Shown: positions 2,438-64,000 of the stretch, in pieces | Layout: each line of letters opens with the position of its first letter | Position numbering within the stretch: position 1 is the first letter of the stretch | Source: Sphyrna mokarran | Taxonomy: Eukaryota | NCBI GenBank assembly: GCA_024679065.1 | Contig: JAGIQG010000040.1 | Location: 12,214,001-12,278,000 of the forward strand | Direction: 5' to 3' | Length of the DNA: 64,000 bases | Translations under genes and position numbers: made by a program | The notes under the pieces: generated by a model | The model's database searches: none | Told to the model about the DNA's origin: nothing | The model's input: the letters and a program-made list of their open reading frames with translations, nothing else

Positions 2438-2748
2438 ATTCTCCTTCCCTGGTATCCAAGAATCCGCCTCTCCAAATCTCTGCTGCCGATGACATGGTTA
2501 CTTTAAGCTGTGAATATTCAGGGTTCTGTCAGTACACAGTGCACTGGTACAGTCAGTCCCCAGGACAGGGTCTGAAGTATTTGCTTCAGAAAGACACTTC
2601 CGGAGAGGACAATAAAGAAAACGCTGCCGGAGGGAGAATTTCTGCTTCTATCGATTCTGTTGAGAAAATCAGCCAGTTAAAGATCTCCGAACTGCAACTA
2701 AGCGACTCGGCTACCTATTACTGCGGACTGAGTCGGCAAAGCCTGAAC
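2438..2748 (+). CDS. TRDV: TCR delta-type V exon, resembling NAR-TCR supporting V-delta (xSPSLVSKNPPLQ...LSCEYSGFCQYTVHWYSQSPGQGLKYLL...SDSATYYCGLSRQSLN)
   Basis: Polypyrimidine tract and CAG acceptor at 2435-2437 (phase 1). V-set hallmarks: first Cys, WY, DSATYYC. Extra Cys in CDR1. Followed directly by a 23-RSS. Confidence 0.9.
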
Positions 2749-2787
2749 CACGTTAGTTGAATCTCCCTTAACACCCGTACAATAACC
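2749..2787 (+). other. Recombination signal sequence, 23-bp spacer (CACGTTA-23-ACAATAACC)
   Basis: Heptamer keeps the critical CAC. Spacer 2756-2778 is exactly 23 nt. Nonamer matches ACAAAAACC at 8/9. Confidence 0.85.
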
Positions 2788-2988
2788 TCCCAGCGTCACA
2801 GGAGAAAGCCAAGCTCTCTCAATAACACCATCCCAATACCACTCCCCACCACCGCCTTCCATCCCCACCGAGTGTACACAATTATTTACCTCCCATCTTC
2901 TTCCCCTATTCCCCACCCCACCCCATCCCCCTCATTCCCGATGCTGGGACATGGCAGAAGGACAGAGAGAGGTGGACGAGATCACAAT

Positions 2989-3016
2989 GGATCTGGTTAT
3001 GGAATCAAACAGCGTG
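2989..3016 (-). other. 12-RSS of J1 (GGATCTGGT-12-CAGCGTG on + strand)
   Basis: Heptamer ends in GTG next to J. Spacer is 12 nt. Nonamer matches GGTTTTTGT at 6/9. Confidence 0.7.
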
Positions 3017-3077
3017 TAACATGGAGAGACTAGAAAGCTCATCTTTGGCAATGGAAGCAGGCTGATTGTGGAACCCA
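3017..3077 (+). CDS. TRDJ: TCR J segment J1 (HGETRKLIFGNGSRLIVEP)
   Basis: KLIFGxG motif, phase-1 donor A|GTAAGT at 3078, upstream 12-RSS. Confidence 0.92.
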
Positions 3078-3788
3078 GTAAGTAACTAATCCTGGATAAT
3101 GATTACTCAACATGTTAGTTCCCCTCCATGACTTCATGGAGCCATACAGTCACTGCGTTATTTCAATTACCAGTATTTTTATATGGAACGGGTGAGCAGT
3201 TCTCATTGGGAATCCAAAGAACAGCTTCACTGGGCATTGAGATAGAGCAGATGAGAGCTTTATTGTTTCCACAATTCAGGATTGTTTCCTTAAAACATTT
3301 AACTGGCCTTTATCATAAAACCCACCTGATAGCTGGCAAGGAGATGTATTGCTGAAATTGTTGTGTGTAATGCAATTAAATGAGAATGAGAGAGAGAGAG
3401 AGAGAGAGACTCCTGCTCAGCCACGCCTAATATATAACATGGCTTTCTCAAGCTCTCAGCACTTCACAAAAACATCTAGCGACTTCTTCCAAAAATAGCT
3501 ATCACTGAAAGCAGAACAATTCTGCGTAAATGCACCACTGGACGAAGCGAGGCAATTTGGTTTTTAATTTGTGCTTGGCTGTGCATATATTTGTAGGATT
3601 TTATAAGATGCATTGTTCCTCTCTTGGTGACAGATAATTTTTAAGGTTTACTATTCGCATACGATGGCAGTTGTCAAAGCTCCCATTATGAACATTTATG
3701 AACGTGCCAGTATCCTTATTTTCGATATTGGTTGGAATCTGAATAAGTTGCTGCGCTTGTAGATTTCTGCTGATAACTGTTCACAGTG

Positions 3789-61400: not shown

Positions 61401-62759
61401 TGGGAGGAAAATCTGGAGTCCAAGATTCAGTGCGGGAGTGAGAATATCACCTTGGCTACAATCTAAAAGCGGGTGGCATCCCACTTACCACCTGATATTC
61501 GCTCTGATTGACTTTCTTTGATTCAGAGAAGTAACTCCAGGCTGTCAAACTCACCCTTTCCTCCACTAGCTCTTGAAATACTCAAAAAAAACAGAGACTG
61601 ATTAAAACTGAGTGGATCAGCTAGGGGTCATTTCAAAACCAGTCTATCTACTCACCAATCAAATCTAACTACTGAGTTATTGAGTTTGATGAAAATCCGA
61701 TCAGAACCTTGCTGATTAAATATATCTTACGCTCTTAAATTACATGCAATAAAAGTGCAACGTTTAAAATAACTACCAGAATAAACAGCCAAAAGGTAAA
61801 GCTGAGATGCCATTAGCTAGGTTGCCCTGTAAAGGTGCTGGGGCTGTCACTATGGGCTGAGTGGCTGCTTTTTTCTCTGTAATAGAATTCTACTATTCTA
61901 AGCAAAGAATATAAAAATCGAAGTTCTATGTGTCGTAAAATTGAAAATGCTGTTTTCAAAAATGTCTTCGATACTAATGCTGGCAGAAACCATATAAATG
62001 TGAGCTCCACGCTGTTGTTGAAACGCACAATTGAAATGTTTGTGTCACATGAGCAGTAGCATTCATGGAGAACCACGAGTTTCAAATCAAAATAATAGTG
62101 GAAAAATGTTACCCAAATGAGGATATTTAAAAGTTAAGCTGCCATTTAAAACAAGTGAGCTTGAATTGCTTGAAGTGGAATCTATGATCAGGAAGTGTCT
62201 GGATTTTGATGCCCCAGTCAATGAGTTCATATCTGAATCCATTTAATCTTCCAACGCAGTTCTGTTTGGAATGAAAGGAACAACAATGGGAGAACATCAA
62301 AGATCAGCAAGAAAAGAACACGTTTTATCTTTACAGTCTCCATTAACCTGCTCCATTAATATTCTCAGACGCCAATGCAAGTGCACAAAAATCCCTACAG
62401 TGCAGAAGGATGCGATTTGGCCCACAGAGTCTGCACCGACTCTCTGAAAGTGCCACACAGCTCAAGACCAGATGATGGGTGTAAAAGGCTGGTCTGTCAG
62501 TGACACCCATAATTAAACACAACTCTGGAGAGGTTTAAGAAGTCAAGGTTGCGATTGGGGGTGGGGGTTGACGGGATGAAAAGCGATGAGGATGGGGCAC
62601 TGGGGGAAGAGTCCGTTTGTCTAAATGTATCCAAGTTACTGTTCACTCCACGGGTTAGCTTCAGCGCTGCCTTAACAGTGACCTCGCGGGATCCCGTCAA
62701 TGGACTGTGTCCATCACACTTTTGTCTTTCTGGGCAGGCATTTAGGTGACCGATCTTAC

Positions 62760-62870
62760 CTCAAAATAACCACACCCTGGCCGTCATCAGGACACTGAAG
62801 ACAATGCTCTTGAGAAACAAAATCCTTAGCCCCATCACCGTCAAAGACAAAAAGTTTGTCCTCAGTCGAT
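62760..62870 (-). CDS. TRDC: TCR C exon 3 (TM), copy B (DRLRTNFLSLTVMGLRILFLKSIVFSVLMTARVWLF*)
   Basis: Intact splice sites, 111 nt, 2 aa differences from copy A. Confidence 0.92.
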
Positions 62871-63341
62871 CTGCCAAAATGAGAAAAACAAATGATAGAT
62901 CTGGTTTGGTACATATATCACTTGGAACTGAAAAAGAAATGTATAACATTAATGTGTTTCTTTTCCATTATCTAACTGCTTGACTTTTGTCCGTCTGTCC
63001 ATCCTGTCCGCTGTCCTCTGTCCACCAGCCCGACTGTCTGCTGTCGATCTATCTGCATCTGTCTTTCACCCTGAATCTCCCTCTCTCTCTCTCTCTCTCC
63101 CTCTCTCTCTCTCTCCGTCTCCTCCTCTCTCTCTCTTTCTTGCCCCCCACCTCCACCCCATCCCCCGCATCCCTCGATTTATATCTCTCTCTCCCTCACT
63201 CTGTGTGACGATCTATCTTTCTCTCCATCTCATTATATCTTTATCATTCGATATCCGGGTCTGTACCCCTGCCTATCTCTCAGTTATCAATCTTTCTATT
63301 TGCAGTATTTTCCATTGAGAAATGTTGAATAAAGCACATAC

Positions 63342-63389
63342 CGTTTTCTGTCGAGGAATCATATCGACTTTTAAGGCATTTAGTTTGAT
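63342..63389 (-). CDS. TRDC: TCR C exon 2 (connecting peptide), copy B (DQTKCLKSRYDSSTEN)
   Basis: Intact splice sites, Cys retained. Confidence 0.85.
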
Positions 63390-64000
63390 CTGGAAGGACA
63401 CAAAACAAACTGACTTATTCAGTGAATAAGTGCCATTACTGTGACCATGTTTGTTCTCAATATCACTTCCAATAATATTGTTGTCATAACAAATAGCCAC
63501 GAAGAAAGTGAGAATCAAACAGCACGATTGGATATGTTCAGTTCATTATTCACAACGGAGAAACATTGATAACTCTGCCATTTAGTTCAGCCCAAATCTG
63601 AGTTCAAAGAGTGTAGGTTCGATTACCCATCAGGGATTAAACCCCAGAATCCAGACCATTCCATCGGGGCGGTATTTCACTGTCTTCCGAAGAAGTGGTG
63701 AAACCGAGGCCTGATTTCAGCTCTGCAGTGGATTAATGATATCAGGACATTTCTCCAGAGGAGCGGGATTCTCCAGTACCCTGGTTAGTATTTAATACTT
63801 TCCTAAATTCGGTGATACACCAGCAGCTGCGGATCCTGGACACTGCCGTGAACTATAATGGTTCGCTCTTATTATTTTTATTCACTTATGGAATGTGGAT
63901 ATCGCTGGCAGGTCAGCATTTACTGTCAATCCCTAATTACCCCCTTCAGAAGATGGTTGTGAGTCCCCTGATTGAAACTCTCCAGCCACCGAATCCATCC

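What the first reader, a model, noticed from the sequence alone, without database searches (positions are those of the whole stretch)
2438..64000. Stand-alone, duplicated TCR-delta mini-clusters (V-J-C cassettes) outside the usual alpha/delta translocon
Seen: a full V-J-C cassette in ~13 kb. Downstream there is no J-alpha array, inverted V or C-alpha for >45 kb. Instead there are GPCRs, tRNAs and a second C-delta (exons 2-4) in opposite orientation with intact splice sites. Established: the canonical C-delta is single and sits upstream of J-alpha/C-alpha; separate delta-derived loci are known as marsupial/monotreme TCR-mu and the avian second TCRD; shark Ig genes are organised as clusters. Inference: this is a multi-copy, cluster-type TCR-delta locus, possibly dedicated to NAR-TCR and analogous to TCR-mu.
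Basis: partly seen in the sequence, partly recalled or inferred. Interest (0 to 1): 0.92.

Follow-up and report, generated by a model that had tools for sequence, protein, structure and literature searches.

The report
Duplicated shark T-cell receptor mini-clusters
This stretch of a shark genome holds a compact T-cell receptor unit (one V, a few J, its own delta-type constant gene) and a second, diverged copy of that constant gene, so this receptor seems to be encoded by repeated mini-loci, as shark antibodies are, and not only by one large locus.

Summary
The window has a leaderless V exon (2438-2748), J1 (3017-3077), a delta-type constant gene (exons at 11460, 14637, 15174, 15782), and a second intact copy of exons 2-4 on the minus strand (63389-61100).

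I add a decayed J (3789-3858) and a second J (10003-10052).

Copy B lies in arm B of an 18-20 kb inverted duplication (14044-33942 versus 63980-45662, about 92.5% identical). That is too diverged for a haplotig. The N gap (45084-45212) lies between the centre and arm B, so arm B's orientation rests on an untested scaffold join.

No TRA-type J or C motif occurs in the window.

The V starts where gene models of Mustelus asterias, Cetorhinus and Heptranchias splice a NAR J onto the supporting V. It also carries the CDR1 cysteine. This is therefore the 3' two-thirds of a NAR-TCR cluster with its own C.

M. asterias has 10 distinct models of this C on at least 9 contigs.

Expression of copies A and B was not shown. 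Only a related transcript was seen.

The scan's first readers noted similar clusters elsewhere in this genome; those notes are unchecked.

My literature searches found only translocon descriptions of shark TCR loci.

The parts
2438..2748 (+). Leaderless supporting V exon. Acceptor AG at 2436-2437, phase 1. CDR1 reads CEYSGFCQYTVHWY. The germline end reads YYCGLSRQSLN.
   Evidence: V-set, E 6e-14; 80-87% identical to the second V of M. asterias models; no leader-like exon upstream.
2749..2787 (+). V recombination signal: CACGTTA, 23-nt spacer, ACAATAACC.
   Evidence: heptamer 4/7 with CAC kept; nonamer 8/9.
2989..3077 (+). J1 with a 12-spacer signal. Nonamer 2989-2997, heptamer 3010-3016, coding 3017-3077 (KLIFGNGSRLIVEP), donor GT at 3078-3079, phase 1.
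   Evidence: (88% to P0039 residues 227-243).
3763..3858 (+). Decayed J. It has a perfect heptamer at 3782-3788, and its coding part carries two in-frame stops.
9975..10052 (+). J2 with a 12-spacer signal. Nonamer GGTTTCTGT at 9975-9983, heptamer 9996-10002, coding 10003-10052 (YEKLTFSSGTQVTVIP), donor GT at 10053-10054. It has FSSG in place of FGxG.
11460..11762 (+). C exon 1 of copy A: C1-set Ig domain with the trd signature CLASDFSP.
14637..14684 (+). C exon 2 of copy A: hinge DQTKCLKNGYDSSTEN with the interchain cysteine.
15174..15284 (+). C exon 3 of copy A: DRLRANFLSLMVMGLRILFLKSIVFSVLMTARVWLF*, with the stop at 15281-15283. An in-frame alternative acceptor at 15117 would add 19 aa.
   Evidence: (the models join ...TEN|DRLR).
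15782..16894 (+). C exon 4 of copy A: untranslated, with ATTAAA at 16872.
   Evidence: (joint 15284>15782 with GT..AG; contigs reach 16894).
14044..33942 (.). Arm A of the inverted duplication.
   Evidence: seven collinear blocks, 16.4 kb aligned, 90.5-94.4% identity.
45662..63980 (.). Arm B of the inverted duplication. It reaches the window's end and may continue beyond it.
27647..28732 (-). GPR139-like 7TM receptor gene in arm A, intact at 361 aa.
48799..49515 (+). GPR139-like copy in arm B. It is cut short at 238 aa and is 92% identical to the arm A copy over those 238 aa. Probable pseudogene.
35629..41728 (.). tRNA genes in the unique centre: Gln 35629-35701 (+), Arg 36670-36744 (-), Phe 40167-40239 (-), Val 41654-41728 (-). 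A Lys call at 39457-39548 is not confirmed.
   Evidence: 5 genes; 4 pass Rfam.
45084..45212 (.). Assembly gap (N) between the centre and arm B. It was neither filled nor bridged.
63342..63389 (-). C exon 2 of copy B: DQTKCLKSRYDSSTEN.
   Evidence: 3 of 48 nt differ.
62760..62870 (-). C exon 3 of copy B: DRLRTNFLSLTVMGLRILFLKSIVFSVLMTARVWLF*. The alternative acceptor at 62927 is also kept.
   Evidence: 4 of 111 nt differ.
61101..62261 (-). C exon 4 of copy B. Its acceptor context is identical to copy A. The far end is approximate.
   Evidence: 94.3% identity over 1110 nt.

Best explanation
The window holds the 3' two-thirds of one NAR-TCR minicluster of a carcharhiniform-like shark: a leaderless supporting V, then J1, a decayed J and J2, then its own four-exon TCR-delta-type constant gene. 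It also holds the 3' part of a second, paralogous constant gene.

That second gene lies in the other arm of an old inverted segmental duplication. The duplication also copied a GPR139-like receptor gene and flanks a small tRNA cluster.

Proposed working (inferred):
- RAG joins the supporting V (23-spacer signal) directly to J1 or J2 (12-spacer signals). No D is used.
- Independently, a NAR V-D-J unit just upstream of the window is assembled.
- Transcription starts at the NAR leader.
- The NAR VDJ exon is spliced to the acceptor at 2437/2438.
- The VJ exon is spliced from 3077 (or 10052) to 11460.
- Splicing continues through the hinge, TM and untranslated exons.

The product would be a three-domain delta-type chain. 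It has a hinge cysteine for pairing with a gamma chain, and the Arg/Lys pair in the membrane helix for CD3 assembly.

Many such clusters exist, so this receptor would be encoded minicluster-fashion, like shark Ig and like monotreme TCR-mu.
For: SHOWN
- Exon and signal anatomy, with phase-1 splice sites throughout.
- V-set and C1-set domains.
- The trd signature is present once; the tra signature and the canonical J-alpha pattern are absent.
- The nearest named C genes are ray TRDC.
- Profile A1 matches human TCR delta chains over positions 1-166 of 169, at E 1e-24 to 6e-23. Seven of the top 10 rows are named delta. No chain named alpha appears among the 60 rows shown.
- The supporting-V hallmarks given in PMC1845163 (passages read) are met. 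There is no leader: 9 candidate ATG/phase-1-donor exons in 2437 nt, with a best hydrophobic score of 1.7 against 3.1 for the NAR leader. The CDR1 cysteine is present.
- In 7 of 8 relatives' models examined, the NAR-J motif G.GTVVTV.. is followed at once by DSSSLVSKNPPL-type sequence. The window's exon starts (D)SPSLVSKNPPL.
- The ex3>ex4 splice is seen, and the exons but not the unique introns are covered, in run X1.
- The second C copy is intact.
- The arms are about 92.5% identical over 16.4 kb, with unequal TE insertions.
- M. asterias has 10 distinct models of this C on at least 9 contigs. Five of them carry leader + NAR V + supporting V + C.

INFERRED
- The rearrangement and splicing order.
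- Pairing with a gamma chain.
Against: - No transcript of copy A or copy B itself was seen. The X1 contigs differ from copy A at 14-15 of 160 exon-1 positions. At 15204 and 15230 they carry letters that fit neither copy fully. X1 is only guessed to be RNA.
- Between A and B the exons are no better kept than the introns: 93.8% and 96.4% against 93.2-97.0%. Four of six changed codons alter the amino acid.
- The heptamers are weak apart from CAC.
- J2 has FSSG.
- Both copies have Ser where all other relatives examined have the membrane-helix Asn.
- The NAR V-D-J unit lies outside the window and is known only from an unchecked note.
- Exon 1 of copy B was not seen.
- Arm B's orientation and adjacency rest on an untested scaffold gap.
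Confidence: 0.72

Rival explanations
1. The clusters are real duplicates, but these two copies are decaying relics. They would be non-functional by-products of cluster expansion, with only other clusters expressed.
For: - Exons are no better conserved than introns between A and B.
- Most coding differences are non-synonymous.
- There is a decayed J and a J2 with FSSG.
- The heptamers are weak.
- The linked GPCR copy B is truncated.
- The X1 transcript fits neither copy.
Against: - All reading frames, both Ig cysteines, the hinge cysteine, the TM Arg/Lys pair and every splice site are intact in copy A and in the visible part of copy B.
- J1 is canonical.
- After 6-9% divergence, an unconstrained 520-nt coding sequence would often have acquired a stop or an indel.
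Confidence: 0.17
2. This is the ordinary single TRD constant region of the TRA/TRD translocon. The J-alpha array and C-alpha would simply lie further downstream than the window reaches.
For: The C is delta-type. The first readers' notes place alpha/delta V arrays on the same sequence piece (unchecked).
Against: - There are 0 canonical J-alpha motifs and 0 tra signatures in the 48 kb downstream.
- A GPCR gene, tRNA genes and a second C lie there instead.
- The only V next to it is a leaderless NAR-TCR supporting V, 270 nt from a J.
- A related species has 10 distinct C models of this type on at least 9 contigs.
Confidence: 0.05
3. Copy B is an assembly artefact: a haplotig, a fold-back or a misplaced contig joined at the gap.
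For: The gap at 45084-45212 lies only 450 nt from the inner end of arm B. Everything in arm B is therefore on another contig than copy A. I did not test the join.
Against: - 6-9% divergence and unequal TE insertions do not fit alleles or a fold-back. For example, 2.3 kb at 30479-32780 is present only in arm A.
- Even a misoriented or misplaced contig would still be a second genomic copy.
Confidence: 0.06

Closest known systems
NAR-TCR (doubly rearranging TCR delta) of nurse shark and elephant shark. Source: Criscitiello et al. 2006, recalled and not held; features as quoted in PMC1845163, PMC5931798 and PMC12227049, passages read.
   Same: The supporting delta-type V has no leader and a CDR1 cysteine. 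It is spliced behind a NAR V-D-J exon. The constant region is delta-type. The relatives' NAR V lacks the WYRK tryptophan and has the a-b loop cysteine.
   Different: The papers read describe it as part of the TCR delta locus, and describe shark TCR loci as translocons (PMC5931798, PMC6795676, PMC12227049 section 6). Here the supporting V has its own J segments 0.27 and 7.3 kb away, no D, and its own constant gene 8.4 kb from J1. No TRA elements follow, and the unit is repeated.
TCR-mu (TRM) clusters of platypus and marsupials (PMC7615758, passages read).
   Same: The architecture matches. The platypus cluster is [V1-Dn-J1-V2-J2-C] with a D-less V2. The clusters are repeated, in both orientations, with partial clusters and single C genes among them. 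C is derived from TCR delta. The chain has three domains.
   Different: The first V there is VH-like, not NAR-type. TRM is mammalian and unlinked to TRA/TRD. The C here is only 14-18% diverged from other C genes of this type in a related shark, so it is not an old separate isotype. The resemblance is convergent and does not indicate membership.
Shark Ig heavy- and light-chain miniclusters (PMC12227049, section 6 read).
   Same: One V, a few joining elements a few hundred bases apart and one constant gene lie within about 15-20 kb, repeated many times.
   Different: The constant gene here is a TCR delta-type four-exon gene with a CD3-type membrane helix, not an Ig constant gene.
Second TRD locus of birds (TCR delta 2; PMC5278385, abstract in the search listing only).
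   Same: An extra delta-type constant gene lies away from the TRA/TRD translocon and is used with an unconventional V.
   Different: It is a single locus with a VH-type V and a one-V chain. It has no doubly rearranging arrangement.

Membership tests
TCR delta constant gene (TRDC) | Exon 1 is a C1-set Ig domain with the peptide signature CLXXXFXP. The tra signature is CLXTD followed by F or XF. Both come from PMC10322711, section 18. | tested here: met
   CLASDFSP at 11546 is the only match in six frames. The tra signature has 0 matches. C1-set E 5e-5.
TCR delta constant gene (TRDC) | Four-exon layout: an Ig exon, a short hinge exon with a cysteine, a TM exon with the stop just before its donor, and an untranslated last exon. 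The layout is recalled for TRAC/TRDC. | tested here: met
   The ex3>ex4 joint is seen in X1.
TCR delta constant gene (TRDC) | Sequence kinship with named TRDC rather than TRAC. | tested here: met
   The nearest named relatives are Hypanus TRDC (38-40% identity) and Leucoraja TRDC (34%). Profile A1 matches human delta chains at E of about 1e-23. No chain named alpha appears among the 60 rows shown. Caveat: the profile contains two ray TRDC sequences.
TCR delta constant gene (TRDC) | Canonical position 5'-trdc-(traj)n-trac-3' (PMC10322711, sections 18-19). | tested here: not met
   There are 0 canonical J-alpha patterns and 0 tra signatures on either strand of the 48 kb downstream. A GPCR gene, tRNA genes and a second C lie there instead.
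NAR-TCR | The supporting V lacks a leader exon and begins at a splice acceptor (PMC1845163). | tested here: met
   The AG is at 2436-2437. None of the 9 candidate leader exons in the 2437 nt upstream is signal-peptide-like. The exon start coincides with the NAR-J|V junction of 7 of 8 relatives' models.
NAR-TCR | Conserved extra cysteine in CDR1 of the supporting V (PMC1845163). | tested here: met
   CEYSGFCQYTVHWY. The same motif occurs in 8 of 8 relatives' models examined.
NAR-TCR | A leader-bearing NAR V with its own D and J lies upstream in the same transcription unit. | not testable with these tools
   It would lie before the window. Only the unchecked note s1-886948 reports it, about 3.2 kb before the start.
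NAR-TCR | The supporting V is assembled by a V-D-J rearrangement. PMC1845163 states 'separate VDJ gene rearrangements'. | tested here: not met
   No D-like element with paired signals lies in the 261 nt between the V signal and the J1 signal. The signals are 23 and 12 and can join directly. A germline-joined V-D cannot be excluded.
TCR-mu (TRM) | Cluster [V1-D-J1-V2(-J2)-C] with a VH-related V1, in monotremes and marsupials (PMC7615758). | tested here: not met
   The layout is analogous. However, the relatives' V1 is NAR-type and the host is a shark. It is an analogue, not a member.
Shark Ig minicluster | A V-(D)-J-C unit with an Ig constant gene. | tested here: not met
   The constant gene is TCR delta-type. 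Only the layout is shared.

The most novel reading that the evidence does not exclude
In at least some carcharhiniform sharks, NAR-TCR is not a product of the TRA/TRD translocon. It would be encoded by a family of self-contained miniclusters, [L-NAR V-D-J]-[leaderless V]-[J1..J2]-[own delta-type C]. These have spread by tandem and inverted segmental duplication among GPR139-like and tRNA genes.

That would amount to a separate, cluster-organised TCR locus. It would have converged in detail on platypus TCR-mu, including the D-less second V. It would also show that the Ig-type minicluster layout was used for a T-cell receptor in cartilaginous fish.
Probability: 0.55. Interest if true: 0.85.

Novelty: new variant of a known kind. 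Interest (0 to 1): 0.75.

Why it matters
Every paper I could read describes shark TCR genes as translocons and places NAR-TCR in the TCR delta locus (PMC6795676, PMC5931798, PMC12227049).

A repeated minicluster with its own constant gene would have four consequences:
- It would change that picture.
- It would give a second, independent case of the TCR-mu solution: a three-domain chain, a D-less supporting V and clusters.
- It would explain how many NAR-TCR genes can be expressed without competing for a single D-J-C.
- It would supply copy-specific markers for asking whether T cells show cluster (isotype) exclusion, as shark B cells do.

The gene models for these clusters already sit in RefSeq for M. 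asterias under uninformative names such as 'T cell receptor alpha chain MC.7.G5-like' and 'uncharacterized protein'.

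Tried and rejected
TRIED AND REJECTED

- PDB search with exon 1 alone. The best hits were Ig mu and light-chain constant domains. This did not help separate alpha from delta. It was replaced by a profile search and by the published signatures.
- My first J scan required FGxG or WGxG plus a phase-1 GT. It found only J1 and missed J2 and the decayed J. tblastn and a looser pattern then found them.
- Tree of exon 1. It is poorly resolved: 12 of 16 inner branches are open. 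It shows only that the window's C lies near, but outside, the two supported Mustelus groups. I draw no orthology from it.
- Species identity. The best named GPCR hit is 82% (M. asterias) and the best C hit is 83-88%. The window is therefore probably from a related species that is not annotated in the collection. It is not named here.
- Continuity across the gap. No TE or homology block spans it, so the sequence alone gives no answer.
- The search of earlier findings by sequence was blank.
- Haplotig reading: rejected on divergence.
- Canonical-TRD reading: rejected on the content downstream.

LITERATURE

Searches were. One search asked for NARTCR, NAR-TCR or NAR TCR from 2020 on. It found 12 papers, 11 of them listed. 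By title or abstract, or by the passages I read, none describes NAR-TCR clusters with their own C.

Not held, so not checked: Criscitiello 2006, Criscitiello 2010, Ott 2021 and Deiss 2019.

Supplements were closed and I did not ask for them. Table S1 of PMC12227049 (coordinates of TCR genes in four elasmobranchs) and Supplementary Note XI of PMC3964593 may bear on whether extra delta-type C genes were seen before.

Full report
THE GAP

I read the gap first. The N run at 45084-45212 lies in non-coding, TE-rich DNA. No exon claimed in the finding crosses it. The two ORFs that run through it are artefacts of X residues.

Its position still matters. It lies 450 nt from the inner end of the right arm of a large inverted repeat. 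Copy A and the centre are therefore on one contig, and everything in arm B is on another. I could not test the join. The N letters were neither filled nor looked up.

ANATOMY OF COPY A (+ STRAND)

The V exon starts at 2438, behind a pyrimidine tract and an AG, in phase 1. It reads (D)SPSLVSKNPPLQISAADDMVTLSCEYSGFCQYTVHWY...DSATYYCGLSRQSLN. It is a V-set domain at E 6e-14. A signal CACGTTA-23-ACAATAACC follows it directly at 2749-2787.

J1 lies 261 nt further on:
- Nonamer 2989-2997, 12-nt spacer, heptamer 3010-3016.
- Coding part 3017-3077 (KLIFGNGSRLIVEP).
- Donor CCCA|GTAAGT.

The loose signal scan gives 34 + 48 hits in the whole window. The weight therefore lies in the signals abutting the coding ends, not in their scores. 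No D-like element with paired signals lies between V and J1.

- A decayed J at 3789-3858, with a perfect heptamer but two in-frame stops.
- J2 at 10003-10052 (YEKLTFSSGTQVTVIP|GTGAGT), with a good 12-spacer signal at 9975-10002 and FSSG in place of FGxG.

A LINE reverse-transcriptase fragment lies in the J-C interval (4852-5781; RVT_1, E 1e-29).

The constant gene has four exons:
- Exon 1, 11460-11762. It is phase 1 at both ends and a C1-set domain at E 5e-5.
- Hinge exon, 14637-14684 (DQTKCLKNGYDSSTEN).
- TM exon ending at 15284, with the stop TGA 2 nt before the donor.
- An untranslated exon from 15782.

The TM exon has two in-frame acceptors, at 15117 and 15174. The relatives' gene models join ...TEN|DRLR, which corresponds to 15174.

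READS

Only one public run (X1) holds part of the stretch. Its kind is a guess (RNA?), and it is stored as contigs.

Laid at 90% likeness or more, it gives:
- A joint 15282>15780 with GT..AG. This can equally be read as 15284>15782. It rests on one contig at depth 53.8.
- Contigs over exon 4 as far as 16894.
- Depth over the exon 1 and TM-exon bins.
- No depth over the unique intron bins 14300-15099 and 15300-15499.

This pattern is that of spliced RNA, and it fixes exon 4.

The transcript is not from copy A or copy B, however. The 323-nt contigs differ from copy A at 14-15 of the 160 exon-1 positions. At 15204 they carry C, as copy B does. At 15230 they carry T, as the Mustelus models do. The variant at 15204 lies 32 letters from the contig's end, which fits a piece starting at about 15173, that is, the 15174 acceptor. 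That last point is an inference.

Transcription of A or B themselves therefore remains unshown. The very deep bins in intron 1 are repeats.

WHAT THE CONSTANT GENE IS

An unrestricted HMMER search with exon 1 gave 35 proteins at E of 1e-3 or better, and 11 at 1e-10 or better.

- The best is M. asterias XP_078058183 (P0003), at 83% over all 100 residues.
- The named constant genes among the hits are 'T cell receptor delta constant' of Hypanus sabinus and Leucoraja erinacea.
- The remaining shark hits carry automatic names.

PMC10322711 (section 18, passages read) gives exon-1 signatures: trd CLXXXFXP, and tra CLXTD followed by F or XF. The window has CLASDFSP once and the tra signature nowhere.

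A profile of exon 1 with five relatives (A1) matches full-length human TCR delta chains over positions 1-166 of 169, at E 1e-24 to 6e-23. Seven of the top 10 rows are named delta. No chain named alpha appears among the 60 rows shown. As a caveat, the profile includes two ray TRDC sequences.

The hinge cysteine and the Arg/Lys pair of the membrane helix (GLRILFLK) are present.

The same paper's positional criterion, trdc-(traj)n-trac, is not met. The canonical J-alpha pattern has 0 matches on either strand.

WHAT THE V IS

PMC1845163 (passages read) gives two hallmarks of the NAR-TCR supporting V: no leader, and a conserved CDR1 cysteine. Both are met.

- In the 2437 nt upstream, only 9 ATG-to-phase-1-GT candidates exist. 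None is signal-peptide-like: the best 8-residue hydrophobicity is 1.7, against 3.1 for the NAR leader of P0003.
- The V is 80-87% identical to the second V of six M. asterias models, 74% to Cetorhinus P0010 and 69% to Heptranchias P0047.
- In 7 of the 8 models examined, the NAR-J motif G.GTVVTV.. is followed at once by DSSSLVSKNPPL-type sequence. This is exactly where the window's exon begins. P0040 has no NAR part.

The first V of those models has the NAR-TCR V features quoted in PMC1845163: an a-b loop cysteine, and FFRQ in place of the WYRK tryptophan.

The NAR V-D-J unit itself is not in the window. tblastn finds none in 1-2400. An unchecked first-stage note, s1-886948, places one about 3.2 kb before the window's start.

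THE DUPLICATION

Self-BLAST shows seven collinear inverted blocks joining 14044-33942 to 63980-45662. They total 16.4 kb aligned at 90.5-94.4% identity, about 92.5% by length. TE insertions are unequal; for example, 2.3 kb at 30479-32780 is present only in arm A.

Copy B of the constant gene is intact as far as it can be seen:
- Exon 2, 63389-63342 (SR for NG).
- Exon 3, 62870-62760 (T for A, T for M). The upstream acceptor is also kept.
- Exon 4 from 62261, with an identical acceptor context.

Homology reaches the window's end, weakening over the last ~35 nt or so. Whether copy B has an exon 1, J segments and a V cannot be said.

The exons are no better conserved than the introns: 93.8% and 96.4% against 93.2-97.0%. 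Four of six changed codons alter the protein. The comparison therefore gives no evidence of constraint.

Each arm also carries a GPR139-like receptor gene (7tm_1). The arm A copy is intact at 361 aa. The arm B copy is cut short at 238 aa. The family is very large in sharks, with 2007 proteins at E of 1e-50 or better.

The unique centre (33943-45661) holds 4 tRNA genes that pass Rfam, out of 5 ARAGORN calls.

Divergence of 6-9% excludes a haplotig or a fold-back. A misoriented contig would turn the inverted repeat into a direct one, but it would leave two copies.

OTHER GENOMES

In M. asterias, 10 distinct proteins (clusters at 90% identity) carry this C. They lie on contigs of at least 9 different lengths (2 of 2 hits; 8 of 13 hits). 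Five of them are leader + NAR V + supporting V (+J) + C. RefSeq names them 'T cell receptor alpha chain MC.7.G5-like' or 'uncharacterized protein'.

The window's C lies near, but outside, the two supported Mustelus groups in a poorly resolved tree. Its hinge also has a different length. The best GPCR hit is 82%. I therefore take the window to come from a related, unannotated species, which makes Mustelus an independent replicate.

The distance between V and C there is not known to me.

EARLIER NOTES OF THE SCAN

These are unchecked. They report:
- Similar self-contained clusters 25.9 kb beyond the end, and 82 kb, 213 kb and 1.76 Mb before the start, as well as on other pieces.
- A cluster beyond the end that also has 'decayed J segments between two intact ones' and a V 268 bp from a J.
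- Alpha/delta V arrays 6.7-7 Mb before the start.

I use these as leads only.

LITERATURE

The papers I could read describe shark TCR genes as translocons and place NAR-TCR in the TCR delta locus:
- PMC6795676, passages.
- PMC5931798, passages.
- PMC12227049, section 6 and passages.
- PMC3149040, passages.

PMC7615758 (passages) describes the platypus TRM cluster as [V1-Dn-J1-V2-J2-C] with a D-less V2. It also describes partial clusters, single C genes and clusters in both orientations. This is the closest known architecture, reached independently.

Six searches found no paper or preprint describing NAR-TCR clusters with their own constant gene. The key subscription papers and all supplements were out of reach, so prior description cannot be excluded.

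VERDICT

The most likely reading (0.72) is a NAR-TCR minicluster with its own delta-type constant gene, duplicated with its surroundings. The supporting V would join directly to J1 or J2, and the product would be a three-domain delta-type chain.

The main rival (0.17) is that these particular copies are decaying relics.

Function, expression, the scaffold join and the genome-wide layout remain to be tested.

Noticed in passing
window 3763-3858 and 9975-10052: Two further J elements lie between J1 and the constant gene. One is a decayed J with a perfect heptamer but two in-frame stops. The other, J2, has FSSG in place of FGxG, with a good 12-spacer signal and donor.
   Followed up: yes
window 15240-15262 and 62782-62804: Both C copies have Ser (FSVLMT) where all 10 M. 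asterias models and 7 other shark and ray relatives examined have Asn (FNVMMT-type) in the membrane helix. I did not assess what this means for CD3 assembly.
   Followed up: partly
window 15117-15173 and 62871-62927: An in-frame upstream acceptor for the TM exon is kept in both copies. It would add 19 residues (VQSDICTKPDLSFVSLILA in A). Relatives' models and the X1 contig fit the downstream acceptor instead.
   Followed up: partly
window 43239-43453 and 44162-44376: A 215-nt inverted repeat, 99% identical, with arms about 700 nt apart, lies in the unique centre. It is possibly a small transposon with terminal repeats.
   Followed up: no
window 25900-27400 and 50100-52400: Long CT-rich low-complexity arrays lie inside both arms. 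They give many spurious Ser/Leu-rich ORFs.
   Followed up: no
window 27647-28732; protein P0050: The GPR139-like family is very large in sharks, with 2007 proteins at E of 1e-50 or better. The best named hit (82%, M. asterias) lies on a contig of the same length (20,430,395) as the contig of TCR models P0002 and P0045. This hints at conserved linkage.
   Followed up: no
window 2438-2748 versus 11460-11762: The supporting V is much better kept across shark orders than C exon 1. V: 69% to Heptranchias, 74% to Cetorhinus, 80-87% to Mustelus. C exon 1: 39-51%, 43% and 78-82% to the same three.
   Followed up: partly
window 2722-2748: The germline V runs 8 codons past the conserved cysteine (CGLSRQSLN). 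This may be a long germline CDR3, or a V-D joined in the germline whose remaining signal is the D's 23-spacer signal. The window alone cannot tell the two apart.
   Followed up: no
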